DNA of 64,000 bases from Styela clava (taxonomy: Eukaryota), in assembly GCF_964204865.1 (NCBI RefSeq), contig NC_135252.1:14074001-14138000 (forward strand), given 5' to 3'. The notes below the pieces were generated by a model. That model was not told where the DNA came from. It saw only the letters and a list, made by a program, of their open reading frames with translations, and ran no database searches. A program made the position numbers and the translations under genes. Of this stretch, positions 33,801-64,000 are shown one piece after another. How positions within the stretch are numbered: position 1 is the stretch's first letter; every line of letters starts with the position of its first letter.

Positions 33801-36800
33801 TTAATGTGAATACCTATTTGTGAACTACCAAACTGTGACAATATTTATTGAGCATAATGATTACGATACTCGAATTGAGAAACATTTACAGCATAAAAAT
33901 TGACTGAAATCTTTTGTTTCCCCCATATTATACAACCAAGGCTGGGTTGTAAAATACTCCGACTCCATTTCCAACCCGAAAGAAAAAATGTTGATAATGA
34001 AAGCTTCGGCATATGCAAGCCTTCTTCATAGACCGGTAAATTATTTTTTTTTAAGTTTTAGTATCAAGTTTTACCTTATCTCATCAACATTGAAAGTCTG
34101 CAATTCAGAGATATTCAGAATTTCGATTCTGAATTCGGGTTTGAAACTTTGCAAATTCGAATCCGACTCTGACTTCAGTGAAAATATGCTAGACACTCCT
34201 GTTAAGACTCCCGAATATATAGCTCTAGTACCAACTTATTAAGTTTTGCGAAAGGTATCATGACCAATAAATACACTATAGATTCTTCAATCGTGCTGAT
34301 TTCGCAATGATTTTTATTGAATCTATAACCGTATACTCAATCATACCATTGATTCTTTTATTATGGTTGACATCAACTGAACTTGAATCGAATTGTTTTC
34401 TGGCAGATGGCATTGGAACTCGCAATTGTTCTTTTGTAATAGGCTGTATTGTTTTGATGTTACTGATGATGTCAGTTAGCTTGTGAACTTTTAGATTTTC
34501 TTTTGATGTGGTAGAATCTTGAGAAAGGCTCATTTCTGTAAAAACAAAAAGATCACATTCTGAAATACTACTTTTTAATATAAAATATGTTCCAAAATGG
34601 ATCCTATTCAATAAGAAAATTTATATTGTATCATGTTATGATACATTCACGGAGATATGGCTGTAGTACAGAAAAGTTAAGACAGGCATTATTCTTATTG
34701 TTAGTTATGGTTGCCAAAGTTATACAAGTCTGGGCTTGGTTTAAACATATGACATCAGTTTGAATTGAATCACATAAATTATATGCAATATTATAAATTC
34801 TTCCGAAAATCAGTAATTTAATAAATTTTTAAAATGAAAATAAATTTCTTGTGAGAGTAATAAATCTAATTTCAAGTCTTGTCAGGTTTTCTCTGACTAT
34901 ATCATGATATGATTTTCAATATGTTTGGTTTGGATTGTCTGTTGAAAAAAGTTTGTGCTGACAAAGAAATCTAAGCTTGGAAAATCAAAGAAATTAAAAT
35001 AGAATTTGGCTATCTAACCTTGGAAAAATCATAAATTGCTGATACGCATGAACAAGAATCTTACAAATGGGGTGAAGGCTTCAAATATTGCATGATATAA
35101 CGACAATGCAACAAATAAAATACCAAAACAATGTCCGTCATTATTTTTTACCAATTACAATCCATGATAAGCTAGTTTTAATTCAAATATTATTTTAATT
35201 AAATCACCTCTTGAATTTAGTGATTCATCAGAATTTTTGCTAATTTCTGCCAAAGCTCCAAATTGTCCAGATGTTATCCCTTGATACATTGGTTCTGACA
35301 AAATATTATGTAAAAATTTGAGAAAACATCAAATACTACTCACACACATGTACACTTTTACAAGACAACCCTTAGCTTTATAATAACAACCATTTACTAA
35401 AGGTGTCTGTCAGTAATTCTTCAATGAAAATAATATTATTGTTCCATCTGATTTATCCACTCAGATATTTTCCAAGTTATAATATATTTCCTATAGAATC
35501 TTAATATGTTGATGTTGCAGATATTCGAATATTCATCATCTCACTCGAAGGATGGGGATATGCAATACCAAACCGAAAGGATTATGGTCATTTCCAACAT
35601 ACCGTAATAGCTTCTAACAAAGTCAGTGACTGATTGTACCAAGCCTTTTTCATAGAAAAAACACCTCATAAAAAGATATAAGCAAATTTGAGCAATACCA
35701 AAATAAAAATACAACACAAACAGCGAATAGTACCAATCAAGGTTTGAAAGTTAAGATGAAAGTTCATGTGAGAGTCACTCAACCTCACACATAGTTTAAT
35801 ATTAATTAAGTCCATGCTTCCGAAAACAAAAAATCCCATACGGGACATGGACTGGTAATCTGACGAGGGCCGTAGTTCGCCATATGATAAAGCCGTCGTA
35901 TAGACTTTCATTTTCCTCCCCGGGATAAATATGTAAATCCTATCCTCACCTTCGATATTTTTCACTTTTTGCTTTCGATTTAGTACATTTTTATTTGGAA
36001 TTACTTTGAATTGGTCAGAGGACACGGGACTCATTGCTCCTCCAATATTGTTAACTGAAAACCTAGAATGAAAAAATTACCTATTCTTATGAGCAAGCTA
36101 TTTATGCTGAGAAAATATCTTTACGACATATAATATTGCACAAAGTATCATCACCCGATATACCAAGTGCTGAGGTGTACCCTTTGAAACCATAAAATTT
36201 ATCATAATCAGTAATCAGTTTATTTTTTCGCATAGGCCTGCTGAAAATATACATTTCAAAGTGAAGGGAGATGCGATAAACTAGTACTAGTCATACTCAC
36301 TTCCAAACATGGAGTGCTCTGTATTTAGCTTTTACACCAGCAAAACTGGGTCCACTTTTAAGGGTATAACAAACCTAAATGAAGAATTAAAAAAATTTGG
36401 ATAAAAACAATGTTGAACTTGAGCCCATATAACACAACAAATATATTATGAAAAATAGTTTCAAGAAATTATTCTTAAAAAGAATGTGAGAGAAACATGA
36501 AACCATTTGAAAAATGCTGGACTTTCCAACTTCATAGATCATTTGATAATCAAAAAAAAGCCTATGAAACGTATCTGAATACTTATTAGGATTTTCATGT
36601 TCAGTATTGGAAGAGAAAAAGTGATAATACAATCTAATAACATGACGAACTACGACCTCTCGTCCGGTTACGAGTCAATGGAGATTTACAATAGATTTAC
36701 AATTATTTTATTCAGATATATGGACCTAATGGTTGAGGAAGCTGCAATCGACTAGCTGTTACATGAAGAAACACAATGTGGTGGAGTCCAGCAATCGCAC

Positions 36801-39800
36801 ATCATGCAGTGGTGTGCCAAACTTTTCCGCTGCCCGGGGCGAGAATATGATGCCCGGGGCGAGTTTCTGATAATGCTGCCCCTTATACCTTCAAAAATAT
36901 TTGGGGAGTAAACAAATTATAGATGTTGTTAATTGTTATACGTGAAAATAAATAAATTGAAGGTCGAGTAAGGGGTGAAATGTTTGTAATATTTTTATTC
37001 AAACCATCGAACTAAGCAACAAACTCACACCTATAACGTGCTGCCCAGGGCGGCTGACCTTTCAGCTCCCCTCTAGGCAGGCCACTGACCACAGGATTTG
37101 GACCTGTTATCCCCTTGCAAGGTAAACAAAAGTGCAATGACAAACGTGTTCCTAACGCTTATCACAATTTTCCTGCATACCTTTTCACCTATGCTCAATA
37201 CTTTTGTTAAGTCATTAGTAAGAGGTTCATTCATTCCAATCTGATATGCTTCAATATTGAAATACACATTTTCGGTAAATAAATCATTGTATCTATCTTT
37301 CTGAATAAATCCAAAATCTGGCCTCAAATTTTTGTGAACGTATCCAATATCTATGGAAAATAAGAAAGAATTTTTTTTAAACCCGAATAAAAAAAGATTT
37401 TCATATTATTAGAAGCCGTAAAAAACATACATACCGAGTTTCCCCGAAAATAAGACCTACCCTTTAAATAAGACCTAGTCAATAACGCGGAATTTTTTTT
37501 TGACCTGGTCGATAGCAAGAAATCTCTCCCATATGTTTTAAATGATTAATCTAAAACGTGTGAGATAGGAAAACGTGTCATTTAAGTAAATGGATATCGA
37601 ATTTCATATTTTGTATATTTGAAAATCTCGTAATTCTCTTCTTCGTAATTTTGTTTTTGATGAATAAAATATAAGAAATCCCCCGAAAATAAGCCCTAGT
37701 GTTATTTTTCGGAAGAATATTGGAATAAGACCCAGTCTTATTTTCAGGCAAACGCGGTAGCAATATCGAGTATAACAACAAAAAATTTGAATCATAGTTT
37801 ATTGTCATTGCAATAAATTGTTAGCTCGCAAAAGCAGAGAATCGTGTATTTACATAATGAAAAGGAAATTGATCAACAATGACTATTAGAGCATGAATGA
37901 TTAACAATATTTTAGAATGAAGTATAGTATATTTATGACTATGGAACTGCATACTTAGTTTAAAATAAATAAATCTAAGAAAAATTTGGAAATACAGGAA
38001 TGTTAAGATAAATACTTATTTAATCATTTGTCAATATTTTAAAGATTATCAGAACGTAAATAAAGACGAAAATAAAATTTTCCAAATAAGAACTACGATA
38101 TAACAATTTTTTCTTCATAGCGCAAATGTAAAATATTGAAATTATTTAATTATAAATTGATGTTCAAATCAATTTGATTTGTTTTAGACAACCCTGCATA
38201 TACCAATGCATACCATAACTAGATTTAGGTGATGGAGGTGGACTCGGAAACACCATCGCATTCGTTACAGTCTTAGCTGGTTGTTTGATAGGAGGATTCC
38301 TTTGAGTCACACTAGCCCAGCTGAAACAAGAATAAGATTTGTTACGAGTGCAATAAACTATATTTGCTAGATTGATGAAGATAATGCTCTAGATCTAATT
38401 GTATAACATTGTGGGCATAGGAAGAAAAACTAATATAAAAAATTTTGAAATTGTTTTAGAATTGAGGACATTCCAACTCAGACAAAATATTTTTCTGATT
38501 GGATTACAGTGGAGAAAAGTTTTGGTAAATAAGAGAGTTATATAAAATTGGTGAGATTTATAATAATAGCAATTACCAACATAAACATTTTACAACTTCA
38601 GTTTTATAGTTATTATTTTCATTTATTCAATTTAGAGAACGCATCCAAAAACAAGATATGAGTTTTGACAGATACTGCATTTCATTCATATTCTAAAGCT
38701 AATTCTGAAAATCAGATGTCTGAAATTATTGGACACTGGGTGTAGCTATTGTTCTTGTTGTCGTTCTGAAAAGTTCTTTTCCTTCAGTACTTGAAGTTGG
38801 CAGTAGTTGCCAGAAGGCTATTTATGCTTCTGCTTTTATAAAAAGAAACACTGGTTCGATATTTTATCCTAATGTTTAAACATATTACACCACTGCATGG
38901 CTTTCTAACTGCCATTCTTCGACTTCCTTGTTGTGAATAGCTTTGGTGGTGACAGCCAGAATTGAATCATAAGCATTTTAATGATCAGATAACAGATATC
39001 TGTGTAGGTAGGTCACACTAATGTAGTACGGTTAGTCATATGACGACCGTTTCCATATATTTGAGCATTGCTGTCCTATTGGACACGTAGTGGACATAAC
39101 AATCGTTTCAAAATTTTGTTGTTATTGTTATTTTCATTATTATTTGTCTCCATCATTTTTAAAAAAATCGCTTTTCTCTTCGAATACTGGACCAATTGCT
39201 TTGAAATTTTCAGTGGTTGAAGATAAAATTTTTCCCCAGAAGGCTATTACTTTTATTCATTTTAAATATTTCTGTTAGCTCTATGAGATTTGTTTTTGTT
39301 TGCTATGACGTCATTAAACGTTCTGCGGACATCGGACGCCATTTTGTGTCCTACTGTACTGCTTCACTTGGTGTGAGTATATTTGTAGACTGTGATCTGG
39401 CGGTACGGTAAACCGTACCCTACTGCGAACAGACGTGTCCATATATTTGGGTGTAGCTCTCTTGTTTCTAATCTAATACAGAAGATTGGAATATAAGTAT
39501 TTACCCTGATAAAGTAGATGTTGAAGATTGAGCAGGAAATTTAGATGCCAATGATGGAAATTCATTAAAAGATTCTTCTGGTATTTGTTTCACACTGTCA
39601 AAAAAGAGTTTTTAAATAATAGGATTCAAGTTTATTCCAAATTTCAGACAACTTTGAAGTCGGAAATTATATTATTTATTTATTCACTATGATTGCTTAT
39701 TTTATGACATGCCTAACAAGTTTTACAACTGATGTAAAATAAATCTGAAATTAATTCTATTTTAAATTTTTATGTAATTTTAGGAATAATTTATTTTGAA

Positions 39801-42800
39801 AATTATCATTTTTAGCGATTAACTAAAAATGGCTTCAGTTAATTTGAAAAAGAAAATCAGACCTCCTGAAGTATGCGCACCAAGATGACGAACAACCTGA
39901 ACTCAGGTTGTGTACCAGGTTAGGGTTCAGGTTATGCGACATTTTGGTGCGCAAACTTCAGGAGTACCAAAAAATCAATTGAGATCGCTCAGTAATTAAA
40001 GTGTTAGACTTGGCATCGAAGATTTAAAAACCTATACCCACCACCTCACCCAGGGTGTAATAATTAGGTAGGCGATGACGAAAAGTAAAAATTCGAACTC
40101 TAAAATTCTAATACATATCATTGGCTGCTCGTAAAGAGCCTCGTTTAGACCAAGCAATATTTAAAAAAACGAAATGTCATTTCACTTTTCTGTATTTTCA
40201 TATTCAAACTCATTGAAGATACAGAGACAGAAAATGATAAAATTTAGAATATATTAGATGCATTCAAAAATATTACTTCTGGGTTTTCCCATCCCCATAC
40301 TGAAAAAATCAAAAATCATACTTACACAGAAGCATCTGCTAAATTATCTTCATATTCTACATCATCATCATCAATTTTTTCTACCTCAAGAGCTCTCCAT
40401 TTGGACTTAATATTTGGATTAGTAACTGGCATTGCATAAGCACTAACCCTGTAAACAATTAATTTGAATAAAGGTAAAGAATACAGGTACTTCAATCTGA
40501 ATCGCTACTGCTAATTTTGGTTGATCTTTCTGTAATTCACGACACAATTATGTAGGTAAATATGTATTAACCAAATACAAGGAGAAACAATGACAACTAA
40601 ACATCTTATTCGACCTAGGGAAAAGCATAGATACCATGTTCGGGTGGCTGTAATCTTTGCAACAGATGGAAGGAGCATAAATTCAAATCCTTGGGTAAAA
40701 AACGCTCTGCCGTTTATATAATATTTTACCATAAAAAAAACAATGATTGTCAAGACTAGAGGAATAAGTCAGTTTTCAGATGCCTCAGTTGCAAGTCTAG
40801 ATGAAATATTGACTATGCATGATTACCTATCGAAATTTTTAAAATGCTTTCTTATATCATCATTAGGTTCGAGACCACAAGCTTCCAAATCGAAGAAAAC
40901 ATTTTCTTCAAATCTCGAAGGTTTGTCATCTCTTTCTATAAATGAGTATTCCTTCTCTATACGTCGAGCTATAAATCCTGAAATGTGAATTGAGTAGAAA
41001 AGTTGAGTAGAAAAGCTTTTAATTTTACAATGCTGTGCTTCTGAGGTCTCACCTAATACTTTCAAGCTATATGAGCAACAAAGTAGACATACTGGTATGG
41101 GTGTACTGAAGTTAAAAAAAACAGATTTCAGCGAAACGAATCTAATTTTAATACCCAAAATGAGGTAATGGACACATGACATGTTTATCACATAATAAGC
41201 CGCGGATCAAACTTGGAGAGTATTATTTGCCTGCTGAGATTATTTAACTTTCTCCAACTGTACATCATGACGCAATTTTCCAAAGCACAGTACAATAATT
41301 TCCCAAATAGATTATAACAAAAAGAAAAGTTTGTGAAGCACTGACCTAACTCATGTACAAATCAATATTCATCCATAACATTTCTTATCCATGAGAATTC
41401 ATTGAAATAACAAACAAATGAAGTCTTGAAATTTAGCTGCGCTCATTATCAAAAGATTAAGACTCAAATAATGCTCACCAAAGATGAAAAACTTGATTGT
41501 AATTGCTTTTTCAAAATGAATTCTCAGGACTTTCAAAAATGATTTAACATTTTGTGATTTAACATTCTAGAAAGTTACCTGTAATATGTATTCCACCAGC
41601 AGGATCAGGTTCAACTTTTAATATCTTTTTTTGTTTATCTATAAAATTTACAAATTATTCATATTAATTCATTAAACATACATATTAAGCTAAGTGCTGG
41701 AAGCATGATCATTATAGCTTTACAAATTAAGATATGATTAAAATAGAATTTATCATTGGTGGAAGAATGGTAAGGTGACGTATGGAAATGGATTTTGACT
41801 GATTAATCAGTAAAAAGTTTTATATTGCTCTCGAGATATCTTTGAGTCATTTTTAGAAAATGATTGTTGAATTCACTCATGTAACAACTAACTGCTAATA
41901 CATTTATAGAGTGCATTGAAAATGGTGTTATGGATAGTTACCACCAAAACAATGTTCAAATATATGAATTTAAAGGTCAAAGGCTTAAAATCGGTGATTT
42001 CTCATTCAACCACTGAATTTATTCACATGCCTACCAGCCAGGCCTCAGCTGACCACTAAGTTTGCTGAGAAGAGTGAAAGAATAATCTGGCAGAATGCCA
42101 AATAGATGTGCAATATAAGACAAACCGGTAATTTTTGGTGTGATATTTTAGGCCCTATCAGACCAGAAGAAAATTTGAGAGTGAGACTAAATGGAAGTAT
42201 AAGGCACCTAGTAATTTTCGTTGTAATCTTCTAGTACTTAAAGTTTTATATTATTTGGTCCATTACTTGTACAATTTATTCACAACAACGAACACCTCAA
42301 CAGGTACAACAACGATGAATATGTGCTTAGCTGGATATGCCTGTAATAAGAAAAGTAAAATGAACTTCACCCTTTTTTCTTTCATACATAAATGGAACAC
42401 TAATTCTTTGCTCTGCTTTCTTTTCCAATTTACTTTTCTGTCCACTATGCTTCTGCAAATTATGACCCTGACAATATAAAGAAAACATAATAACATAGAA
42501 ACGCTTTTAAACTACTGTAATAAACTAATTTAGCAAAATAGGAAATTACCTGTAAATCTATTTCATCTCTATAGACAGGAATGCGATCTGATTCCATGCA
42601 TTCAGGATGTTCACATGGAAAATGATTTTCACGCTGATGTTCAAAAAGTGAGTTCTTGTCTCTAAATAAAAATATTGAGCATTAGCAGGAAAGTTGATGC
42701 CATCCTCGCTAGAAGCAGATCTCGCATATAAGCCAACCTCTTGAAAAAGGCTCTAAAACGGTAAATTTATACAAATTTGCATATGTGACATGTGTGTGAC

Positions 42801-50537: not shown

Positions 50538-50955
50538 TAGGGTTACCATATTTTTGTGACTTCAGAGTGGGAGCTTATAAATACAACGACCCCTTAGCTG
50601 TGATTTTGTAACTTTACATTTTCCGATTTTACTACATAGGCCTACATTTAAAGCTATCCCGGCTGTCTTCATTGACCATATTGTCATCGAGATTTAATGC
50701 GCATATTCTCTGTCCAAATATCAGGTTCAGTTCGAAAAATGGCAAGGAATTGTCGTTAACGATACCGGTACAAATAATTCGAATTTAGACTAATTAGTAT
50801 TGGTTTTACATGCGATGCGTTTTCTAACAATGTTAGCGAGAAACAACGAAACAAACGCATTTACCTACCCAAAGCGGGACTTTTGGCTGACATGGCGGGA
50901 CAAGACGCTAAAAAGCAGGAATGTCTCGCCTAAATCGGGACGTATGGTAAGCCTA
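50538..50955. mobile_element. hAT (Blackjack/MER81-like) MITE
   Basis: TIR tagggttaccata / tatggtaagccta; cgggac subterminal repeats; 8-bp TSD ggtataaa / cgtataaa. A left-truncated duplicate lies at 59984-60301. Confidence 0.8.
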
Positions 50956-53900
50956 CGTATAAATATAGTGCAATCAGGCAGCTAACTATCGCATTAGTAA
51001 AGTAGTCTTACTCTTCATTATGAAGCAAATTTTCTGTTTGGGAGGGGCGTGTCCTACGGTAAGTCCATACCAGTATTGCAGCTCAGCAATTCCATCGGAT
51101 TCCATAAGTCTTTGTATTCAATGTAGAAAAATTTACATGCAAATGGTTAGAAGCAAAGGTTGCAAGGACAGGATATTGATAGGCCTATGTGTTCGACTGC
51201 AAATCGAAATTAACCGTGTTTCAATGTTTTATAAAAAAAATCATTATTTGTGTGTCATGCTGTAATTGCCTCATCGTTTTTGATAAGACCCTGAGTTGGT
51301 ATAGTTATATTTAAAAGCAGAATATCCAATCAAATGGACGTTTTGGATGCATGAGCATGCCTGATTGGTAGAAATGACGACTGTTGGATTTTAAAAAAAA
51401 TCATCGTGTTACGAATATTGGAAAAACAATCGTGCTAATCGTAGGATTACCTAACATAACTTTATTTTGGATAAGCGTTTTAGTCTTTAGGTAATTTATA
51501 AAACAGGTTTCTGTTACAATTATAGCCATTTATTGGAGGAATCTCAAAATCAAACGATAACGAATTGGACAGTAATGTTTCTATTTACGCAACTTTGTTT
51601 GAAATCTTTCATACATCCGCATATTTCGTATTAATCTGAAACGTACACTGTGATTGATGAGCTTTACTTCGAGGCTTTGGGTCAGATTGCCTCATTTTTC
51701 TATTCTGCAAGGTGTTGTTGTAGAATCTTCTTCCTTCACACTGCATTGTTCAAATACTTAGTATCGTTTTCTAGCCGCCATTACATTGCACACGATCCAC
51801 AGCACAATTAAACAATTTGAAGCAACTGGGTTTCTTCAATGGTACGAGCCACAGCAAATGCAATGTAACAATGTTGAATAAGAGATGAAAGCTAATATTT
51901 TGGCATCATCATGGGAGTTCTCTGAAGACTTGAATGGACTTGTTTAAAACACAGTTAGGCTAATCGACGCGATTTTAACAATCGCATTGGATTTGAAATT
52001 TTTCCTATTGACACGATTAACGATTAGAAACCATTAATTACAGATATGAAGACTTCGCTGAATGAATGCGGCGCGGAGAAATGGGCATTAACAGAGAACC
52101 GTTAAAAATAATAAGTATGAAGCAAGTAACGTTTTATACTCCTTTTTTAAAAAAAAATGTTTATTTGATTATGAGCAGATACATGCGACAAAACATAACA
52201 GTTCGAGCTCATTATTTATTTTTTACTGAACGCCGGAGTTTCCGATACCATTAAATGTTAATTTGAATTTTGGTATAGCGAAAGTTTACAATTTATCTAT
52301 TATATAAACTATTTGGATTTTATGTTTAGCAATTTTGGTCATATGAACATGAGCGTTTCGCAAAACAGAAAGAACAGAAAAATTTGAGGTGAAATATCGC
52401 GCCAAGTATAAAATTAAAAAATATAATCATGACAATACCCTTCCAGTGACTTCGCCTATCTTGGAGTAATGAATATTTGAAATTGATCTCCTCGAATGCC
52501 TGTGTTAGCCTACTATTACTATGTACAAAATGCGCTTTTTATTCATCTTGTCATTCAGAAAAGGATGAGACTTTTTTTTATATATATTTAAACGGATTTT
52601 AATTGTTATTGCAAATGCACATCCAAAAGTTTAATTCCGAGTTAATAATTTTGTTATCGCACTATGATGCTACATCTCTGTGACCTTTCTATGATTTTGT
52701 TTACGCCCTAGTGATCAGTATTGTACTTGATCAAAGTATAGTATAATATGTATACATTTTAACACATGCCCTCTAAGTCTAAACTATACAATAAATCTGA
52801 TTTAAAGTGTCGAATAGGGGGAATTTTTTTTTATATTTATCAGCCGACTCATTTTTGTCTTTATTTTATAATTTCATATCGTAATAATCCATACTGACAG
52901 TTTGATCACAGCGTAAATAAAATGGTCAGGATCTGTATTTCTGCACTGTATTTCTATAAAAATTTGTACTATTGCCCTTTTTTAACATTGTTTTATTTAA
53001 ATAAAATCTCCCTCTCTCTCTCTCTCTCTCTCTAGTCCTACGGCGCATTTATAAATAGAGAGATCGGACTTTAGCTTGCGCCATAGAAAAAGATCTGGAG
53101 CCTCAGATAGATTATACGTTACTAACTGCACCAGTTAAACACAAAACTCAATTCCCTTGTCATGTAAATTGTAAACCATTAATGGTTCTAGAATGAAATA
53201 AATCCTGTTAATTTTATAGTTCGGCCGTTGGCACAGTTGATCATCATACCGTAAATATATACTACTACGATGATACACGTTTGGCACGATTCAAATGAAT
53301 ATATTTCTCTGGTAAATTTAACGAAATGATTATATTTAGTCAATATATATATTTTAAACTTCGGCTGATGTCGCTAATTGTTAGGGGATTTGTTTAAAAT
53401 TTAGAAAATGGATGAAATCGTGTGCTGTGCATTGAACTAGAACAACGAACATTAAATGAGGTCCGTACTTGGTATGAAAATCCTCATTTCACGCTATTCC
53501 AAAACTTCGTGTGCGTCAAGTTCATATCAAATATTTGAACTAAATTGCCTTCGAGACAAGTCCATGCTTAATGGCATCTTACTTTGACACGTATAAGTCT
53601 TTTTCCAAGATTGTTATATCCTGAAATGTATGAGGTAGCCGACACATAACTTGCAAAAAAATCCGGACGATGTCACCACAACTATAAGGAAACATAAAAT
53701 CAAACCACGAGAAGCTAACAACAAACGTAATAATATGCTGAAATTCAAATACATATCTTACTTTTTAGCACTTTTTAAATAAAAATGTTATTACATTTTA
53801 TTATTTAAGTTATACATTGACAATTCTCATTCTTCGACGAGAATACTTGAAAAAAAAATATACTTCATGACGACAAATACAAATGTGATAAATTTTAGTT

Positions 53901-54513
53901 TTATGCTTCTCGTTTACGACGAGGCTTTCTACAATGCCAGTTTCTCGCTTTGGAAATTTTTTAAGCTTAGTATCAACTTTCAGGAATCATGCAATAAATG
54001 TTTTAGCTGTTTTAATCTGATAATCAATCTTCAGATGATAGTTGTACGGGCGTGGAAATTTATCAACATAGACAATTGGTTTTACTAATCGTGCAGTCGT
54101 CGCGAATGATTCAGAATTTCTACGATTTGAACAAAGTTTGTTTTATTTCAACTGAAATGTCTTGTTTAAAAAATTTTGCAATGGTAGTGTAACATATTCG
54201 TAGGAACAATCTATGTTTGAAATTTTGTATCAATATAGATGTCTAATATTTTCTCGTGGGCATGAAAGTAAACATAGGAATAGGCTTAACACAATAATAA
54301 AGAAAGTGATCAAAAAAAGATTTATATTTTAATCGTGTTTTTTTTTCATAATTATATTTTTATCCGTAATTGCTGAATTTAAGACACCAAAAATAAATCT
54401 GCCTAAATTTTTAATTGATCATTTTACGTCAAACCTTGACGTCCTGAACGTCTATTGTTAACATTGCGTCTCATGCAGTAAGCTTTAGGAACAACAACTT
54501 GTTGATATTTCAT
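50646..54513 (+). repeat. Segmental duplication, copy 1
   Basis: Colinear and near-identical to 59984-64000, from atttaaagctatcccggctgtc to ..caacttgttgatatttcat, with scattered substitutions and a few indels. Confidence 0.95.
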
Positions 54514-55824
54514 GGTTTAATCGCGTTTTGTATATTTTGTTTACCACTCGCTTTATATATTGTTTATACGCACTCTGTATTTTTGTATTTAGATTGTCCG
54601 TGAAACGTGACGATTTGGTCACACCTGTCATTCATCTGATAGATTCATCTGTGACATATCAGATAAAGGGTTTATCCTCGCTGTAACGTTTATAATATAC
54701 TCTCTTAAGTATCAGAGTTATTAGAGGCTGAGCCGTAGTACGAGAATTTATTACTTCAACCAAATCAGTCCGAAATGTTTTCATTAAATAAACAAAGGAT
54801 TATAGAAACGATTTAATTTTAATTACATTGAAAACGATATGATAATCAAACAGTTGTTTAGACAAAGATTCACAACTTTACTTCTTTCATTAATACTCTT
54901 CGAATATTAAAAATTCAAAACAGGGAGGGTTTTGTATTTTCTTTTTTAGAATGCCTGATTTTTATAAGATCGCTTTTCAGTGGCGTTATTTTTTTTATTG
55001 TATACCCTCTTGTAATTTTGGGAAACTGAAAACCGTCCAGGGCCACGCTCGGGGATTAATGATGGGCTATTACTAATCAACGAGAGTAGTGGACACTATA
55101 TGATTGGATGTTGATTTGAATGCAACCATTCACATATATGCTTGAAAACACAGAACGCTAACCGTTTTAATATTTGGACACTCTATTCGAATGTCCAAAA
55201 TAAAGACAGAACCTGAAAATTTATATTTGTATAAAAATATATATAGAAAAAATGAATAATATTTTGTCCACTCTAGACTGGTGGTGCTGTTTGTAACAAA
55301 TTAAATTCATTACTGTCAGAGAATACTTTTTATATAAGGTCTCGTAACGACTAAACAAGAATAGAATCCGTCGGATTTTAACATGGTTTGCAAAGCATCA
55401 ACACACATTACCGGCACTGATCCACACATGATGAGAGAACAGCACTGCTATGACCCTTAAATACCACACCATCGAACAAACAAAATTGTGAATTGAGGCA
55501 TAGATACAGTTTATAACCATGTTGCAATATAAAATTATTTCACACAAGTATAGAAATATTGCATGGAAACGAAATGACAAACGGAAATATTTGTAAATCT
55601 TAGATACAGTATACGCAATATATGCTAGCACGTATTAAAAAAATTGTCACAATTGTCAAAAAAGTTCTTGTGGTGTTTTTGGATGTTAGAAAAAGTGTAG
55701 AATAACAATTTGTTATATATTAGATAAAATAACCGTCGTCATGCAATTAAATAACGTATCGTCCTATTTTCTATGCACCAAGAACGTTGTATATTTTCCC
55801 GAGAGTGAACACCGCTTTCAGTCA

Positions 55825-56240
55825 CTATTCAAAATCAAAGAACGGATCTTCATCTGTTAAATTAAAAATTTGTTTTTGTAATTTATATATATTTCCAATG
55901 CAATGTAATGATGATTTGATTCAAATGCTTCGCTGATATAAGTTGAATAAATCGGGCAGCAAAGAACTTAATATTGCGGTCTTACCTAATATAATTGATC
56001 CTTTCCTTCGTACGTCCGTGGGCCACCACGATGGAGGCGCTGAGTCTATTCTGAAAGTGAATTATAAAATTGTACATAATAATTTAAAATTTTCTTTACA
56101 TTCCACTATCTTGAACTAACTTTCAATTTTACTAACCTTGAACTCCGGCCTTTTTCAGGCTCTGAGGCTGAGATTAGGACGATACTAGATATCAAACAAA
56201 ACAATAGAAAAATTGCTTTAACTAATCCCGCAATCATCAT
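55825..56240 (-). CDS. Small secreted prepropeptide A (65 aa), family not recognised
   Basis: Exons 56240-56137, 56050-55986, 55853-55825 (GT-AG, intron phases 2 and 1) give MMIAGLVKAIFLLFCLISSIVLISA SEPEKGRSSR IDSAPPSWWPTDV RRKG SIILDEDPFFDFE*. Splice sites and frame are conserved with paralog B, and length differences are multiples of 3. Confidence 0.85.
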
Positions 56241-56340
56241 GAAAAAATTAGAATTTTTAAGATTCAAATGATTATTCTAAATACTTCTGTCGTGAGTGTT
56301 GGCGCCGAGAATATGATTCAATTTTATGTACGATTTGCTG

Positions 56341-56346
56341 TTTATA
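56341..56346 (-). promoter_or_regulatory. Candidate TATA box of prepropeptide gene A
   Basis: TATAAA on the minus strand about 100 bp upstream of the ATG; also present at the homologous position in gene B (58486-58491). The AT-rich background weakens the call. Confidence 0.4.
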
Positions 56347-56735
56347 GAAAATCGCATCCCCGTCATATGGTTCGCCACCAGTCTCCGACGGAAAAAAAAT
56401 CTAAATTTGCTGATGTTGTATTTTTATAATGAACCGCATTGATAAGTTATATTTATATTGTGTTTGATTCAATGTCATTAAGCTGGGAGGATTTAAACCA
56501 CACCTACTGTAGAAAATGCACAAGCTTCACAGAATTTTCAAGGTAACTTCTGATGGCACGAAGCGTCTAATAAGACCATTTGCATGGTTTAAATATAGAA
56601 ATGTTTCAAACTGAAGAATTAAGTCCCATGTCACATTGCCGAATTGAAGTGCAGTAGAAACTGGTTTCATATTAAGAAACTGTTAACAATTCAGACGTTA
56701 CTCATAATTCCAAATGTATTACCTAATAACTGTCT

Positions 56736-57028
56736 TGTTAGGTACACCACCAGAACGTGTACCCTCAAAAACTGGTACCTAAACGCCGTTCCCGAATGGC
56801 TTTTCCAGTATGACTGTACCCAGCCTGCTGTCACTGTGCCAAGGTGATATTCCCTTTGGTCGTTGCTATGCTGTTTGCTGCCCATGGTTACCCCTCTCGT
56901 ACTTGACGGTGCCCAGAGTCTCTTTTCTGTAACAAATTTGGTTTTTGGACTTGATATTTGATATATTAATTTATATATTGTTCGTCTTATTTCTATTAAA
57001 CTTGTATCAAAGTTAGACTCCTATCACA
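56736..57028 (+). mobile_element. Possible solo LTR upstream of prepropeptide gene A
   Basis: TG..CA ends (tgttagg / cctatcaca), GC-richer body, ATTAAA about 30 bp before the 3' end, located in the segment absent from unit B; no convincing TSD. Confidence 0.35.
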
Positions 57029-57940
57029 GGTATCGCTGATCAATAACCAACTTTGGTTTTTCGCGTCACCTTTCACCATGAAATGTCATTTTCAACTTTT
57101 TTTATGTTCACTGTGAGTGCATTTTCATTTTGGTGAAAAATAAACTACTGACTGACTATTTTCCTTTTTAAACTAAAAATAAACATTTAACGTCATCAAT
57201 TACACGATGATTAAGAGATAAATACGCCAAGGCAAATATTTAAAACAGAAAGATTCTATATTTGAGTACATGAGCATAAAACAATCTAAACATAATTTAC
57301 TTGAACTAAATCTATGTAAAACTAAATTGATGTTCAAATTTCCAGGATAAACACAGACTCAGAAAATTTACATTAGTACAAGGAAAATGAATAATATTTT
57401 GCCCACTCTAGGATGGTGGCGCTGTATGTGACAAATTAATTCATTGTTGTCAGAGTGTATTTATTATATAAAGACTCGCAACGGACAAACGATAACAAAA
57501 TCAGTCAAAATTTAACATGGATTGCAAAGCATCAATACACATTACCGACACTGATCTACGCATCATGCGAGAACAGCACTCTCATGAGCACAAATATCAT
57601 ACCCACAAAGAAAACAAATTGTGCGTCGAGATATAGGTTTAATTTATAAATGCAAAATTATTTCGCACAAATGTAGAAATAATATACAAAAACGAAACGG
57701 CAAATATTTGTAGATCTTAAATACACTATATAAGCATTATGAGCTAACATTTTCAGTTCGTCAAAAAAGTTGTCACAACTGTCAGAAAGTTCTTGTGGGG
57801 TTTCTGGATGTTATAAATAGTGTAAATTTGTTTATATCAGATAAAATAATCGTTGTCATAAAATTAAATATCGTATTGTCATATTTTTCATGTAGCAAGA
57901 ACGTTGTATATTTTCCGGGAGTGAACAGCGATTTCAGTCA

Positions 57941-58360
57941 CTATTCAAAATCGAAGAACGGATCTTCATCTGTAAAATTAAGGAAAGTTGTTTTTGCAAT
58001 ATATATATATAAATATAAGGCCATATAATGATTATTGGATTCAAATGCTTGACTGATTCAAGTTAAATAAAGCCGGCAGCAATAAACCTAATATTACCTA
58101 ATATAATTGATCTTTTTCTTCGTCCCCACGATGAGTTCGGTGGAGACGTTGAGTCCACTCTAAATGTGAATTATACATATTAAATACATATACGTTATTT
58201 TACATTATAATTTGAAAATTTTCTTTACATTGCGCTATCTTAAACTAAGTTTTAAGTTTACTAACCTTGACTCGCGGGGCCCATAGGCTGAGATCAACAC
58301 GATGGTAGATAGCAAGCAAAATAATAGAAATATTACTTTAACTAATCTCGCAATCATCAT
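57941..58360 (-). CDS. Small secreted prepropeptide B (61 aa), paralog of A, with predicted Trp-amide core
   Basis: Exons 58360-58266, 58159-58098, 57969-57941 give MMIARLVKVIFLLFCLLSTIVLISA YGPRESR VDSTSPPNSSW G RRKR SIILDEDPFFDFE*. G-RRKR is an amidation Gly followed by a furin consensus site. Confidence 0.85.
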
Positions 58361-59983
58361 GAAAAAATCAGATTTTTCCGGATTCAAATGAATATTCCAC
58401 TGAAACCTGAAACACTTTTGTCAAATCCTTTTTCCGTGAATGTTGACAACGAGAATATGATTCAATATTACGTACGATTTTTCGTTTTATAAAAAAATTC
58501 TCTCCGTCGGATGGTTCGGTACCAGTCTCCAAAAAAAAAAAAACTAAATTTGCTGATGCTGTATTTATATAATAATCCACAATAGATAAGATATATTTCA
58601 ATTGTGTATTCATTCAATGTCATTAGGCAGGGAGAAATTGTATTCAAACCACACCTACTGTAGAAAATGCACAATTTTCACAGTCATTTCAAGGTAACGT
58701 GTGATGGCACGAAGCGTCCAATAAGAACATTTGCATGGTTTAAATATAAAAATGTTTCAAAACTAAAAATTTATTGTTTTTTAAATTAAACATAAACATT
58801 TAACGTCACTAATTACAATATAATTAAGAGATGTAGACGTCAGAACAAATATTGAAAACAGGAAGATTTGAGTGCATGAGCTAAAACAATCAAAATATAA
58901 ATGGGAAATTATATCAGGCACTCATTGTCTAACATAAATGTGAAAACAAACAAATCCGTCAACGCAAAACTAATAAAAAATTAGTCAGTATTTTTGTCAC
59001 AGACTCTCATTACTTCGTTGTTTACATAACAATGATTTAAAGTAAACAACTTACTTATTATTGGACACGAAATGGACCTATGGATCGTTTTATTATTAGA
59101 CTGTTGTTCTTGTTGATATTTTCCTTCTTGTTGTGATCGTATGAAAAAATTCCCGATATCATATAATGCTAATCTAAATTTTGGTATATATATATATATA
59201 TAGTACAACCCATCTATTATATAAACTATTCAGGTTTTCTGTTTACCATTTTTGGTCGTACTTTGGACATTAATGTAAATGAACATGAGGGTTTCGTAAA
59301 ACTTATCATCATTCTGATTTAAATTGGCTGTAAACATGGGCACGAAAGTCAAATGACTATGATACAACGCAATGTAAACAAATTTCAACTGAATTTTAAT
59401 TGAATTGTCTCTATTTTCATATGAAGGTATGTCTAAGAATTAAAAAAGGCAAACTTTGGGGTGAAATAACTCACAGGAAATTGATAAAAAAATCAAGGTA
59501 TCTGTACTCACTATAACTAATACAACTAATATATGCAAAATCATCTTTTTGTCCATCTTGTCATTTTAAAAAAGATGAGTCTTGATTCCGAGTTGATAAT
59601 TTTGCTATCGCACCACAATGCTACATCTCTGTGACCTTTCTATAATGTAGACACATTGTTAAGCCCGAGTCCTACGGCGCATTTATAAATAGAAATATAT
59701 ATATAACTTTAGCTTGCGCCCTAGAAATAGATCTGAAGTCACAAATAGATTATAAGTTACTAACTATAGCAGTATAACTACCAGTTCAAAACACAACTCA
59801 ATTTCCATGTCATATAAATCATTATGGGGTTTAGAATGAAATGAATCTAAAAATGAAAATGAATGCGATGTACTAACATTTTCAATTGAAAAGTGCTGGA
59901 AAGTATGATATAATTTGAAGTTCAGCATATTCTTACGGTGGTGTTAGCTTTTCGTGGTTTGATTTTATGTTTATTTATTGTTT

Positions 59984-62900
59984 ATTTAAAGCTATCCCGG
60001 CTGTCTTCATTGACCATATTGTCATCGACATTTAATGCGCATATTCTCTTTCCAAATAACGGGTTCAGTTCAAAAAATGGAAAGGAATTGACGTTAACGA
60101 TACCGGTACAAATAATTCGAATTTAGACTAAATAGTATTGGTTTTACATGCGATACGTTTTCTAACAATGTTAGCGAGAAACAACGAAACAAACGCATTT
60201 ACCTACCCAAAGCGGGACTTTTGGCTGACATGTCGGGACGGCGGGACAAGACGCTAAAAAGCAGGACTGTCTCGCCTAAAGCGGGACGTATGGTAAGCCT
60301 ACGTATAAATACAGTGCAATCAGGCAGCTAACTATCGCATTAGTAAAGTAGTCTTACTCTTCATTATGAAGCAAATTTTCTGTTGGGAAGGGGCGTGTCC
60401 CACGGTAAGTCTATACCAGTATTGCAGCTCAGCAATTCCATCGGATCCCATAAGTCTTTGTATTCAATGTAGAAAAATTTACATGCAAATGGTAAGAAGC
60501 AAAGGTTGCAAAAACAGGATATTGATAGGCATATATGTTCGACTGCAAATCGAAATTAACCGTGTTTCAATGTTTTATAAAGAAATTATTAGTTGTGTGT
60601 CATGCTGTAATTGCCTCATCGTTTTTGATAAGACCCTGAGTTGGTATAGTTATATTTAAAAGCAGAATATCCAATCAAATGAACGTTTTGGATGCATGAG
60701 CATGCCTGATTGGTAGAAATGGCGACTGTTAGATTTTAAAATAATCATCGTGTTACGAATATTGGAAAAAACAATCGTGCTAATCGTAGGGTTAACTAAC
60801 ATAACTTTATTTTGGATAAAAGCGTTTTAGTCTTTAGGTAATTTATAAAACACGTTTCTGTTACAATTATGGCCATTTATTGGAGGAATCTCAAAATCAA
60901 ACAATAAAGAATTGGACAGTAATGTTTCTATTTACGCAACTTTGTTTGAAATCTTTCATACATCCGCATATTTCGTATTAATTTGAAACGTACACTGTGA
61001 TTGATGAGCTTTACTTCGAGGCTTTGGGCCAGATTGCCTCATTTTTCTATTCTGCAAGGTGCTGTTGTAGAATCTTCTTCCTTCACACTGCATTGTTCAA
61101 ATACTCAGTATCGTTTTCTAGTCGCCATTACATTGCACACGATCCACAGCACAATTAAACAATTTGAAGCAACTGGGTTTCTTCAATGGTACGAGCCACA
61201 GCAAATGCAATGTAACAATGTTGAATAAGAGATGAAAGCTATTATTTTGGCATCATCATGGGAGTTCTCTGAAGACTTGAATGGACTTGTTTAAAACACA
61301 GTTAGGCTAATCGACACGATTTTAACAATCGCATCGGATTTGAAATTTTTCCTATTGACACGATTAACGATTAGAAACCATTAATTACAGATATGAAGAC
61401 TTCGCTGAATGAATGGGGCGCGGAGAAATGGGCATTAACAGAGAACCGTTAAAAATAAGTATGAAGCAAGTAACGTTTATACTCATTTTTCTCAAAAAAA
61501 TGAATTTAATTATGAGCAGATACATGCGACAAAACATAACAGTCGAGCTCATTATTTATTTTTTACTGAACGCCGGAGTTTCCGATACCATTAAATGTTA
61601 ATTTGCATTTTGGTATAGTGAAAGTTTACAATTTATCTATTATATAAACTATTTAGATTTTATGTTTAGCAATTTTGGTCATATGAACATGAGCGTTTCG
61701 CAAAACAGAAAGAACAGAAAAATTCGAGGTGAAATATCGCGCCAAGTATAAAATTAAAAAATATAATCATGACAATACCCTTCCAGTGACTTCGCCTATC
61801 TTAGAGTAATGAAAATTTGAAAATTGATCTCCTCGAATGCCTAGCAAGATAACTGTGTTGGCCTACTATTACTATGTACAAAATGGGCTTTTTATTCATC
61901 TTGTCATTCAGAAAAGGATGAGACTTTTTTATATATTTCTAAACGGATTTTAATTGTTATTGCAAATGCACATCCAAAAGTTTAATTCCGAGTTAATAAT
62001 TTTGTTATCGCACTATGATGCTACATCTCTGTGACCTTTCTATGATTTTGTTTACGCCCTAGTGATCAGTATTGTACTTGATCAAAGTATGGTATAATAT
62101 GTATACATTTTAACACATGCCCTCTGAACTATACAATAAATCTGATTTAAAGTGTCGAATAGGGGAAAATTTCTCTTTATATTTATCAGCCGACTCATTT
62201 TTGTCTTTATTTTATAATTTCATATTGAAATAATCCATACTGACAGTTTGATCACAGAGTAAATAAAATGGTCAGGAGCCTCGGTGACCTGTAAAGGTCT
62301 TGCATACTGACCAACACGATTCAATGTTTAATTATTAACTGCACTGTATTTCTATAAAAATTGGTACTATTGCCCTTTTTTAACATTGTTTTATGTAAAT
62401 AAAATCTCTCTCTCTCTCTCTCTAGTCCTACGGCGCATTTATAAATAGAGAGATGGGACTTTAGCTCGCGCCACAGAAAAAGATCTGGAGCCACAGATAT
62501 ACGTTACTAACTATACAACCAGTTAAAAACAAAACTCAATTCCCTTGTGATGTAAGCCATTAATGTTCTAGAATGAAACAAATCCTGTTAATTTTGTAGT
62601 TCGGCCGTTAGCACAGTTGATCATCATACACGTTTGGCACGATGCAAATAAATAAATTTCTCTGATAAATTTAATGAAATGATTATATTTAGTCAACAAA
62701 TATATTTTAAAATTCGTCTGATGTCGCTAATTTTTTTAAAATTTCGAAAATGGATGAAATCGTGTGTTGTTCATTGAACTGGAACAACGAACGAACATTC
62801 AATGAGGTCCGTACTTGGTATTAAAATCCTCATTTCACGCTATTCCAAAACTTCGTGTGCGTCAAGTTCATATCAAATATTATGAACTAAATTGCCTTCG

Positions 62901-64000
62901 AGACGAGTTCATGGTTATTTGCATTTTACTTTGACTCGTATAAGTCTTTTTCCCAGATTATTATATCCCAAAATGTATGCGGTAGCCGACACATAACTTG
63001 CAAAAAAATCGGACGATGTCACCACAACTATAAGGAAACATAAAATCAAACCACGAGAAGCTAACAACAAACGTAATAATATGCTGAAATTCAAATACAT
63101 AACTTACTTTTTAGCACTTTTCAAATAAAAATGTTAGTACATCGCATTCACTTTCATTTTAGGAGATTAACATGGTGATAAGATAATTGTGGAAGCCGTT
63201 CGGATAAATGTCGCGATATAAATTTGATAAACAGGTCATATCTTTTTTACGTTGTCCAAAACACAACACCAGCTCTTCTCATATTTAAGTTATACATTGA
63301 CAATTCTCATTCTTCGACAAGAATACTTGAAAAAATATACCTCATGACAACGAATAAAAATGTAATAACTTTTAGTTTTATGTTTCTCGTTTACGAAGAG
63401 GCTTTCTACAATGCCAGTTTTTCGCTTTGTAAATTTTTTAAGGTTGGTATCAACTTTCAGAAGTCATGCGATAAATGTTTCAGCTGTTTTAATCTGATAA
63501 TCAATCTTCAGATGATAGTTGTACGGGCATGAAATAAAACAACACAGACAATTGGTTTTACTAATCGTGCAGTCGTCGCGAATGATTCAGAATTTCTACG
63601 ATTTGAACAAAGTTTGTTTTATTTCAACTGAAATGTCTTGTTTAAACACTTTTGCAATGGTAGTGTAACATATTCGTAAGAACAATCTATTTTGACACCA
63701 TGTTTGAAATTTTGTATTAATATAGATGTCTAATATTCTCTCGTGGGCATGAAAGTAAACATAGGAATAGGCTTAACACAATAATAAAGAAAGTGATCGA
63801 AAAAAGATTCATATTTTTATCGTGTTTTTTTTTCATAATTATATTTTTATCAGTAATTGCTGAATTTAAGACACCAAAAATAAATCTGCCTAAATTTTTA
63901 ATTGATCATTTTACGTCAAACCTTGACGTCCTGAACGTCTATTGTTAACATTGCGTCTCATGCAGTAAGCTTTAGGAACAACAACTTGTTGATATTTCAT
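59984..64000 (+). repeat. Segmental duplication, copy 2 (runs off the window end)
   Basis: Matches 50646-54513. It begins inside the Blackjack-like MITE and has extra segments at about 62277-62340 and 63140-63280. Confidence 0.95.

What the first reader, a model, noticed from the sequence alone, without database searches (positions are those of the whole stretch)
55825..58360. Hidden tandem family of 3-exon secreted peptide precursors: signal peptide, variable core, RRK(R/G), invariant acidic tail
Seen: two minus-strand genes split into 29-104 nt exons and missed by the ORF track. A: MMIAGLVKAIFLLFCLISSIVLISA-SEPEKGRSSR-IDSAPPSWWPTDV-RRKG-SIILDEDPFFDFE. B: MMIARLVKVIFLLFCLLSTIVLISA-YGPRESR-VDSTSPPNSSW-GRRKR-SIILDEDPFFDFE. 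All splice sites, phases, start and stop are conserved and coding length differences are in frame, while introns and flanks carry arbitrary indels. Established: signal peptide plus basic cleavage sites plus an acidic C-terminal extension is the layout of neuropeptide and host-defence precursors; ascidian clavanin and styelin precursors have anionic C-terminal extensions. These sequences match no family I recognise. Inference: an undescribed, diversifying secreted peptide system for signalling, defence or recognition, possibly a ribosomal precursor of modified peptides.
Basis: partly seen in the sequence, partly recalled or inferred. Interest (0 to 1): 0.92.

Follow-up and report, generated by a model that had tools for sequence, protein, structure and literature searches.

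The report
Orphan sea-squirt secreted peptide gene array
The two small three-exon genes are real and belong to a seven-copy tandem family, found only in the sea squirt Styela clava, that looks like a set of hormone-type or defence-type peptide precursors; one copy is already in RefSeq as an uncharacterised protein, and neither expression nor function could be tested here.

Summary
Observation confirmed.

The family is larger than reported. There are seven intact copies of three types (A x3, B x3, C x1), all in one array on contig C3 and nowhere else in the 377 Mb genome. The array is three 9.58 kb units of A+B, followed by a promoter fragment and gene C.

Evidence that the genes are real:
- All coding indels are multiples of three; non-coding indels are mostly not.
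- Signal peptide and tail are under purifying selection (10 of 26 changes non-synonymous against 78% expected, p about 1e-5).
- The propiece and core evolve near neutrality, so "diversifying" selection is not shown.
- Six of seven copies have Gly before RRK(R/G), an amidation signal. The window's copy A is the exception.

A profile search of 1.84 billion proteins gave one hit, XP_039267745.1 (uncharacterized LOC120342824, Styela clava). Its last 61 residues are spliced protein B exactly. Its 68-residue N-terminal extension is not conserved and looks like an annotation artefact.

No known family matches.

Verdict: a real, lineage-specific family of prohormone-like precursors, of moderate interest. 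The scan has no report of it on other DNA.

The parts
56137..56240 (-). Gene A1 exon 1: start codon, 25-residue signal-like segment, 9.7 codons of polar propiece; ends in phase 2
55986..56050 (-). Gene A1 exon 2: completes the Arg of R-S-S-R, 13-residue core, RRKG, first four tail residues; ends in phase 1
55825..55853 (-). Gene A1 exon 3: last nine residues of the invariant acidic tail and TAG stop
58266..58360 (-). Gene B1 exon 1: start codon, signal-like segment, short propiece
58098..58159 (-). Gene B1 exon 2: core ending in W-G, RRKR, first four tail residues
   Evidence: identical to residues of P0001
57941..57969 (-). Gene B1 exon 3: rest of the acidic tail and stop
56314..56346 (-). 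Gene A1 putative core promoter: TATAAA at 56346-56341, then 32 nt to the CA of the conserved AATCATATT (A at 56314). No ATG between here and the start codon.
   Evidence: same spacing of 32-33 nt in all seven copies; inferred, no transcript ends seen
58458..58491 (-). Gene B1 putative core promoter: TATAAA at 58491-58486, CA of AATCATATT at 58459-58458
   Evidence: inferred
59512..59556 (-). Upstream 'exon 0' used by the RefSeq-type model of the B copies: ATG in a strong context, 15 codons, then donor GTGAGT. In the model it is spliced to the acceptor ..ggag|ACTGGT at 58526. In B1 a 7-nt insertion puts it out of frame with the precursor.
55249..56620 (-). Ancestral 1.4 kb duplication unit, copy A1 (about 380 nt of promoter, the gene, about 575 nt downstream)
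   Evidence: 77% identity to 57384-58771
57384..58771 (-). Ancestral 1.4 kb duplication unit, copy B1
50646..64000 (-). In-window part of the higher-order array. Unit 1 (A1+B1) and the start of unit 2 lie here. The array runs on to window-equivalent 79128 (G000:C3:14153128), followed by a promoter fragment (C3:14156596-14157029) and gene C (C3:14159981-14160407).

Best explanation
A Styela clava-specific tandem family of seven small genes (61-69 codons, three coding exons) that encode prohormone-type secretory precursors.

Inferred path:
1. The N-terminal 24-25 residues direct the protein into the ER and are cut after the invariant ..IVLISA.
2. Furin or PC-type convertases cut after RRKR (after RR or RRK in type A) and probably after the R-x-S-R at the exon 1/2 junction.
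3. A carboxypeptidase trims the basic residues.
4. In six of seven copies the exposed Gly is converted to a C-terminal amide.

Predicted products:
- A short neutral peptide rich in Pro, Ser and Trp: 12 residues in A2/A3, 11 in B, 15 in C, and an unamidated 13-mer in the window's A1.
- The invariant, strongly acidic 13-residue C-terminal peptide.

I favour the amidated core as the released ligand or effector, with the tail as a conserved pro-domain for sorting, folding or enzyme docking. This follows the pattern of other multigene peptide families, which have a conserved signal and extension around a variable middle. Transcription most likely starts about 75-100 nt upstream of the start codon, at a conserved TATA plus initiator pair.

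Shown: the gene structure, copy number, selection on the frame, the motifs, identity with a RefSeq model, and presence of the processing enzyme families in the genome.

Inferred: secretion, the cleavages, amidation, which product is active, and the promoter.
For: - Exact exon models, with 7 of 7 copies intact and conserved GT..AG sites and phases.
- All 5-6 coding indel events are multiples of 3. Non-coding indels are 1, 2, 4, 5, 7, 8, 17, 19...
- Exon 3 differs by 3-7% between types, against 13-28% in the adjacent introns and flanks.
- pN/pS is 0.18-0.42 in the signal, 0-0.12 in RRKx plus tail, and 0.4-1.3 in the propiece.
- Signal plus tail shows 10 non-synonymous changes of 26 against 78% expected, p = 1.4e-5.
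- ..IVLISA is invariant in protein despite several synonymous changes.
- Signal descriptors: basic n-region (K8, R5), a 16-17 residue hydrophobic run, Ile at -3 and Ala at -1.
- Gly precedes the basic cluster in 6 of 7 copies; R-x-S-R is present in 6 of 7.
- XP_039267745.1 ends with the 61-residue spliced B protein and equals a model built on copy B2 residue for residue.
- The genome holds Cu2_monooxygen (PHM-type) and P-domain convertase genes.
- TATAAA lies 32-33 nt before a conserved initiator-like CA in all seven copies, and the leader has no ATG.
- The protein-language-model neighbours among eukaryotes are small prohormones, but with scores of 0.76-0.79, in the noise range.
Against: - No RNA evidence was obtained here. 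The RefSeq model is a computed prediction, and it uses an upstream exon with a strong ATG. If that exon is always included, the 61-residue reading frame would not be the first one translated.
- No signal-peptide predictor was available. A 16-17 residue hydrophobic run could also act as a membrane anchor.
- The most conserved part is the tail, not the core, which in cross-species neuropeptide comparisons usually marks the active peptide.
- No orthologue is known outside this genome, so no long-term conservation is shown.
- Type A has RRKG rather than a clean furin site, and copy B3 lacks the P4 Arg of R-x-S-R.
Confidence: 0.62

Rival explanations
1. Same precursor, opposite reading of the products. 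The invariant acidic 13-residue C-terminal peptide is the bioactive product, made in seven gene copies for dosage. The variable propiece and core are a loosely constrained spacer.
For: - The tail is the most constrained segment: 0-1 non-synonymous against 2-3 synonymous changes per pair, and exon 3 diverges only 3-7%.
- It is released by the best cleavage site in the protein (RRKR).
- The propiece and core are not distinguishable from neutral.
- Recent amplification of near-identical units (95-97%) fits selection for dosage.
Against: - A Gly amidation signal on the core is kept in 6 of 7 copies, and a shared core motif survives 22-27% exon divergence. Neither is needed for a spacer.
- Documented multigene peptide families conserve the signal and anionic extension while the middle is the active part (myticalins, PMC5577615).
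Confidence: 0.2
2. A small single-pass membrane protein rather than a secreted precursor. Either the hydrophobic segment is an uncleaved anchor, or the true product is the RefSeq 129-residue form, with an upstream signal-like start and the hydrophobic segment as a transmembrane helix. The C-terminal part would then face the cytosol and the acidic Phe-Phe tail would act as a trafficking or FFAT-like docking motif.
For: - XP_039267745.1 is annotated in that long form.
- Exon 0 has an ATG in a strong context and encodes a hydrophobic start.
- The tail contains two Phe in an acidic tract.
- The hydrophobic run of 16-17 residues is long for a signal peptide.
Against: - The extension is open only in B2 and B3. 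B1 has a 7-nt frameshift, A types have a stop 12 codons upstream (A1, A3), C has one 2 codons upstream, and A and C have no exon 0.
- B2 and B3 differ in the extension by 6 non-synonymous and 0 synonymous changes, so there is no coding constraint.
- The basic residues sit on the N-terminal side of the hydrophobic run, which favours a luminal C-terminus.
- Gly plus RRKR has no role in the cytosol.
- The FFAT position 5 would be Phe instead of a small residue (own knowledge of the motif, not tested).
Confidence: 0.08
3. Not functional as protein: recently amplified DNA whose open frames persist only because the copies are young, or a non-coding transcript.
For: - Within-type copies are 95-99% identical, so their intactness says little.
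- No transcript evidence was obtained here.
- No homologue is known in any other species.
Against: - Types A, B and C differ by 19-27% in the exons yet keep frame, splice sites, start and stop.
- All coding indels are in frame.
- There is a strong deficit of non-synonymous change in signal and tail (p = 1.4e-5).
- NCBI's pipeline produced a spliced model with the same junctions. To my knowledge that pipeline keeps models without protein homology only if transcript alignments support them.
Confidence: 0.06

Closest known systems
[quoted passage not shown] Clavanins and styelins of Styela clava are recalled as having a similar layout.
   Same: - The same order of parts.
- Gly before the basic site, for amidation.
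- The signal and extension are conserved while the middle varies in length and sequence.
- A phase-1 intron falls a few residues after the basic site, in the extension (for myticalins; here).
- Lineage-restricted multigene family.
   Different: - The middle peptide here is 11-15 residues with net charge -2 to 0, rich in Pro, Ser and Trp. It is not a 23-42 residue cationic peptide with pI above 11.
- The extension is only 13 residues and is invariant rather than moderately conserved.
- An extra propiece sits between the signal and the core.
- No sequence similarity was found to anything else in this genome.
- The clavanin and styelin precursor layout is from my memory and was not checked in a paper here.
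Classical neuropeptide and peptide-hormone precursors. The AKH / corazonin / GnRH group is the nearest in the look of the peptide.
   Same: - Short precursor.
- Neutral Trp-containing peptide ending in an amide made from Gly plus basic residues: ..S-S-W-amide in B, ..W-P-T-N-amide in C.
- A C-terminal 'associated peptide' follows.
- An AKH-type prohormone cluster appears among the weak atlas neighbours (rank 21, score 0.76).
   Different: - There is no Gln/pyroGlu directly after the signal peptide; a 7-12 residue propiece comes first.
- No Pfam hit to Adipokin_hormo or GnRH at E <= 1.
- Seven tandem, fast-changing copies with no orthologue known, unlike conserved single-copy hormone genes.
- The resemblance rests on 3-4 residues and may be chance.
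XP_039267745.1, uncharacterized protein LOC120342824 [Styela clava] (RefSeq)
   Same: The whole 129 residues equal a four-exon model on copy B2 of this assembly.
   Different: - It carries a 68-residue N-terminal extension from an upstream exon and the 5' leader.
- That extension is not conserved in the other copies and shows no coding constraint.
- No function, family, processing or tandem array is recorded, and the A and C types have no public protein.

Membership tests
Processed secretory (prohormone-type) peptide precursor: a kind, not a homology family | Cleavable N-terminal signal peptide | tested here: inconclusive
   Heuristics only: basic n-region, 16-17 residue hydrophobic run, Ile at -3 and Ala at -1, and an invariant ..IVLISA under purifying selection. 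No SignalP or Phobius was available.
Processed secretory (prohormone-type) peptide precursor: a kind, not a homology family | Basic convertase sites flanking the peptide | tested here: met
   RRKR in B1-3 and C; RRKG in A1-3; R-x-S-R before the core in 6 of 7 copies.
Processed secretory (prohormone-type) peptide precursor: a kind, not a homology family | Gly amidation donor before the basic site | tested here: met
   Present in 6 of 7 copies. A1, the window's copy A, has Val through one base change.
Processed secretory (prohormone-type) peptide precursor: a kind, not a homology family | Processing enzymes encoded by the organism | tested here: met
   PF01082 Cu2_monooxygen gives 46 exon matches; PF01483 P_proprotein gives 11 matches, two of them strong.
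Processed secretory (prohormone-type) peptide precursor: a kind, not a homology family | Spliced mRNA and mature peptides exist | not testable with these tools
The only indirect support is that the RefSeq model has the same junctions.
Cationic antimicrobial peptide precursors with an anionic extension (clavanin / styelin / myticalin type) | Signal, then mature peptide, then (Gly) basic site, then anionic C-terminal extension | tested here: met
   The tail has five acidic residues in 13. The architecture is as described for myticalins.
Cationic antimicrobial peptide precursors with an anionic extension (clavanin / styelin / myticalin type) | Cationic, amphipathic mature peptide | tested here: not met
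   The predicted cores contain 1-2 Asp and no Lys, Arg or His. Net charge is -2 (A1), -1 (A2/3) and 0 (B, C), counted.
Cationic antimicrobial peptide precursors with an anionic extension (clavanin / styelin / myticalin type) | Sequence relatedness to known members | tested here: not met
   The exon-1 profile finds only the seven copies in the whole genome, with the next hit at E = 0.02, and only XP_039267745.1 among 1.84 billion representatives. No direct alignment with clavanin or styelin sequences was made, because none was available by reference.
AKH / corazonin / GnRH peptide superfamily | Peptide starts with Gln (pyroGlu) directly after the signal peptide | tested here: not met
   A 7-12 residue propiece intervenes, and the core starts with Ile or Val followed by Asp.
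AKH / corazonin / GnRH peptide superfamily | Profile match to the family (PF06377, PF00446) | tested here: not met
   hmmscan of P0001 at E <= 1 lists only Toddler (17 bits, cut-off 27) and Cox20.
AKH / corazonin / GnRH peptide superfamily | Trp near an amidated C-terminus, followed by an associated peptide | tested here: met
   ..S-S-W-Gly-RRKR in B and ..W-W-P-T-N-Gly-RRKR in C. This is a superficial feature shared by many peptides.

The most novel reading that the evidence does not exclude
The invariant acidic Phe-rich tail is a docking ('follower') sequence for a modifying enzyme. The family would then be an animal-encoded system for ribosomally made, heavily modified Trp/Pro peptides (for example brominated or hydroxylated Trp, as in styelin D of the same species). 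The variable cores would be alternative substrates, and the tail would be removed at RRKR afterwards.
Probability: 0.08. Interest if true: 0.8.

Novelty: new member of a known kind. Interest (0 to 1): 0.45.

Why it matters
Ascidians are the closest invertebrate relatives of vertebrates, and Styela clava is the source of clavanins and styelins. Its small secreted peptides are still poorly catalogued, because genes of 60-70 codons split into tiny exons escape ORF-based annotation.

This locus gives four concrete, synthesisable candidate peptides (three of them amidated, all Trp-containing) plus one invariant acidic peptide, so they can be looked for by mass spectrometry and tested for signalling or defence activity.

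It also corrects a probable RefSeq mis-annotation (129 against 61 residues). And it gives a clean case of a conserved signal and extension around a fast-changing middle, in a non-cationic peptide family.

It does not open a long-standing question. Lineage-specific secreted peptide families are common in animal genomes.

Tried and rejected
- Close homologue search. Exon 1 of A with 12 in-frame upstream codons, to widen the length window, found no candidate. The search with P0001 found only itself.
- Papers. None holds the peptide strings, the LOC number or the XP accession.
- Rfam gave nothing in the window.
- The bacterial promoter and terminator scan is irrelevant for this eukaryote and was at or below shuffle level.
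- Pfam on ten long ORFs of the window gave nothing.
- Atlas neighbours all scored under 0.85, which is noise level. The structural neighbours are unrelated helices.
- The weak Pfam 'Toddler' match (17 bits against a cut-off of 27) lies in the non-conserved extension. I rejected it.
- A tail-like 27-mer on contig C13 with two mismatches (..D-Q-L-F-D-F-E) is isolated and I took it as chance.
- FFAT-like reading of the tail: rejected on topology and on the motif (see rivals).
- Positive selection on the core: the counts are too small and not significant.
- Joined spliced models were not sent to any search tool. Exons were searched by reference. The joined B protein was examined only through the public protein P0001, which contains it. 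Exons were joined only inside scripts, from the session files, for translation and codon counts.
- Clavanin and styelin sequences were not typed in, so no direct alignment with them was made.
Full report
**1. What is in the sequence**

- Gene A uses 56240-56137, 56050-55986 and 55853-55825 (104 + 65 + 29 nt, 65 codons).
- Gene B uses 58360-58266, 58159-58098 and 57969-57941 (95 + 62 + 29 nt, 61 codons).
- Introns begin with GT and end with AG, and the phases are 2 and 1 in both genes.
- The start motif and the last exon each occur twice in the window, against none in shuffles.

**2. Extent of the family**

The window is G000:C3:14074001-14138000 of a 377 Mb assembly.
- A DNA search with gene A found seven full copies and one promoter fragment, all within 31 kb on the same strand.
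- A degenerate pattern for the tail found the same seven copies, plus one isolated two-mismatch site elsewhere.
- A profile of the exon-1 peptides found the same seven, with the next hit at E = 0.02.
- A self-comparison of the region shows three units of 9.58 kb, 95-97% identical, each holding one A and one B gene (window-equivalent 50646-79128). These are followed by a promoter-only fragment and a third type, C.
- A, B and C share a 1.4 kb ancestral unit at 75-78% identity.

All seven copies keep start, stop, splice sites and phases. Copy A2 has lost the first of the two ATGs and would start at the second.

**3. Are they genes under selection?**

- Between types, coding length differences are 3, 6, 9, 3 and 9 nt. 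Indels in the introns and flanks are 1, 2, 4, 5, 7, 8, 17, 19 and 24 nt.
- Exon 3 differs by 3-7% where the neighbouring introns and flanks differ by 13-28%.
- Codon counts give pN/pS of 0.18-0.42 for the 25-residue N-terminal segment and 0-0.12 for the basic cluster plus tail. They give 0.4-1.3 for the propiece and 0.4-3.3 for the core, on very few sites.
- On a three-branch star, signal plus tail has 10 non-synonymous changes of 26 where 78% are expected (p = 1.4e-5). Propiece plus core has 20 of 30 where 76% are expected (p = 0.17).

The frame is therefore read as predicted, across both junctions, because the tail spans exons 2 and 3. But the data show relaxed constraint in the middle, not demonstrated positive selection. 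The most variable part is the propiece; in B3 it was replaced in a local burst (13 differences in the 95 nt of exon 1, none in exon 2).

**4. Anatomy of the product**

- N-terminal segment: a basic n-region (Lys 8, and Arg 5 in B and C), a 16-17 residue hydrophobic run, and an invariant ..IVLISA with Ile at -3 and Ala at -1. It is kept at the protein level through several synonymous changes.
- A 7-12 residue polar propiece ending in Ser-Arg, with Arg at P4 in six of seven copies.
- Core with a shared skeleton [IV]-D-[SL]-[AT]..P-P..W:
  - IDSAPPSWWPTDV in A1
  - IDSTPPSWWPTD plus Gly in A2/A3
  - VDSTSPPNSSW plus Gly in B1-3
  - VDLTPPPPLFWWPTN plus Gly in C
- RRKR in B and C; RRKG in A.
- The tail SIILDEDPFFDFE, with one Leu-to-Ile change in A2/A3.

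Gly followed by basic residues is the standard amidation signal. It is present in six of seven copies, and the window's copy A is the exception through one base change. The cores have no basic residue (net charge -2 to 0). The tail has five acidic residues.

**5. Independent support from a public model, and the organism**

A profile of the exon-1 peptides, searched against 1.84 billion representative proteins, gave one hit (E = 7e-16). It is a 129-residue protein whose last 61 residues are spliced protein B, letter for letter. It is XP_039267745.1, uncharacterized protein LOC120342824 of Styela clava.

A four-exon model on copy B2 of this assembly reproduces all 129 residues. Its parts are an upstream exon (59556-59512 in the B1 copy, donor GTGAGT), an acceptor ..ggag|ACTGGT 159-166 nt before the main ATG, and the three coding exons.

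This identifies the genome as Styela clava, in agreement with another agent's note and with a cellulose-synthase match. It also shows that NCBI's pipeline arrived at the same two coding junctions. From my knowledge of that pipeline, models without protein homology are retained only with transcript support, so this is indirect evidence of expression. I could not verify that here.

The 68-residue extension is unlikely to be real coding sequence:
- B1 has a 7-nt insertion that shifts it out of frame.
- A1 and A3 have an in-frame stop 12 codons upstream, and C has one 2 codons upstream.
- No exon 0 lies upstream of A or C.
- B2 and B3 differ in it by six non-synonymous and no synonymous changes.

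**6. Promoter**

All seven copies have TATAAA 32-33 nt upstream of the CA in a conserved AATCATATT. There is no ATG between that point and the start codon; the nearest upstream ATG is at -117, -247 or -190. This fits a proximal start site giving a 74-98 nt leader, with exon 0 as an alternative or spurious 5' end. No transcript ends were seen, so this is inference. No conserved poly(A) hexamer was found: ATTAAA lies at +298 in B and +111 in C, and there is none before +650 in A.

**7. Comparison with what is known**

- Pfam finds nothing above cut-off in XP_039267745.1.
- Word-based searches find no other protein.
- No paper holds the peptide strings or the accession.
- The protein-atlas neighbours are below the noise threshold, although the eukaryotic rows are all small prohormones or frog-skin peptide precursors.

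The layout matches multigene families such as mussel myticalins: a conserved signal, a variable middle, Gly plus a dibasic site, an anionic extension, and a phase-1 intron just after the basic site. But those middles are long and strongly cationic and these are not, so I do not file the family as an antimicrobial-peptide precursor.

The Trp-amide endings recall AKH and corazonin-type peptides. However, the defining pyroGlu start after the signal peptide and any profile match are absent.

The processing machinery exists in the genome: many Cu2_monooxygen genes and P-domain convertases. A paper on a related ascidian reports furin in the granules of haemocytes that store a styelin-like propeptide (PMC9966394).

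**8. Mechanism and odds**

- Most likely (0.62): secretory precursors cut by signal peptidase and convertases, yielding a short, mostly amidated Trp/Pro-rich peptide and an invariant acidic peptide.
- Within that reading, I favour the core as the released ligand or effector. The case rests on its amidation signal, its shared motif and the precedent of other multigene families. The alternative, that the tail is the active part, gets 0.2.
- A membrane micro-protein reading gets 0.08 and a non-functional reading 0.06.
- Whether the role is signalling, defence or reproduction cannot be decided without tissue data. Recent amplification and the lack of known orthologues lean towards defence or reproduction. 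The neutral, short, amidated cores lean towards signalling.

**9. Limits**

- No signal-peptide predictor and no other tunicate genomes were available.
- Joined spliced models were not sent to search tools. Exons were searched by reference, and the joined B protein was examined only through the public protein that contains it.

**10. Verdict**

This is a real, lineage-specific, seven-member tandem family of prohormone-like precursor genes. One member is already in RefSeq as an uncharacterised protein, probably with a false N-terminus. It is a new member of a known kind, of moderate interest (0.45).

Noticed in passing
window 59171-59778 (exon 0 at 59556-59512, minus strand); related copies at 52254-53140 and 61594-62530: An element about 1 kb upstream of each B gene carries a TATAAA, an ATG in a strong context, 15 hydrophobic codons and a GTGAGT donor. 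RefSeq splices it to the B gene. Two paralogous copies per unit (61-89% identical) have a stop and no donor at the matching place. It may be a relic first exon of another secreted-protein gene, or an alternative promoter.
   Followed up: partly
G000:C13:10.37-10.76 Mb and C5:14.98-15.01, 17.89-17.96, 20.90-20.99 Mb: The PF01082 search gave 46 exon matches in dense clusters. This suggests a large expansion of copper type II ascorbate-dependent monooxygenase (PHM/DBH-like) genes in this genome, which may be relevant to heavy peptide modification in Styela.
   Followed up: no
G000:C3:14156596-14157029 (window-equivalent 82596-83029): A promoter-only fragment of the family (81-85% identical to the 5' flanks of A and B) lies between the third unit and gene C, with no coding exons.
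   Followed up: partly
copy B3, G000:C3:14151430-14151524: The propiece codons were replaced in a local burst: 13 differences in the 95 nt of exon 1 against B1/B2, while exon 2 is identical and the flanks differ by 1-4%. This could be a small conversion or a mutation cluster.
   Followed up: no
copy A2, G000:C3:14139820: The first ATG is ATA in this copy. The second ATG, one codon later, would have to serve as the start.
   Followed up: no
P0001 residues 8-42 (non-conserved extension): A weak Pfam match to Toddler/ELABELA (17.2 bits, cut-off 27), lying in a stretch without coding constraint. I took it as chance.
   Followed up: yes
window 36301-41638: Another first-stage note reports a ZNF598-like E3 ligase fused to cold-shock-like domains here. 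The two 122-residue ORFs in that area had no Pfam match.
   Followed up: no
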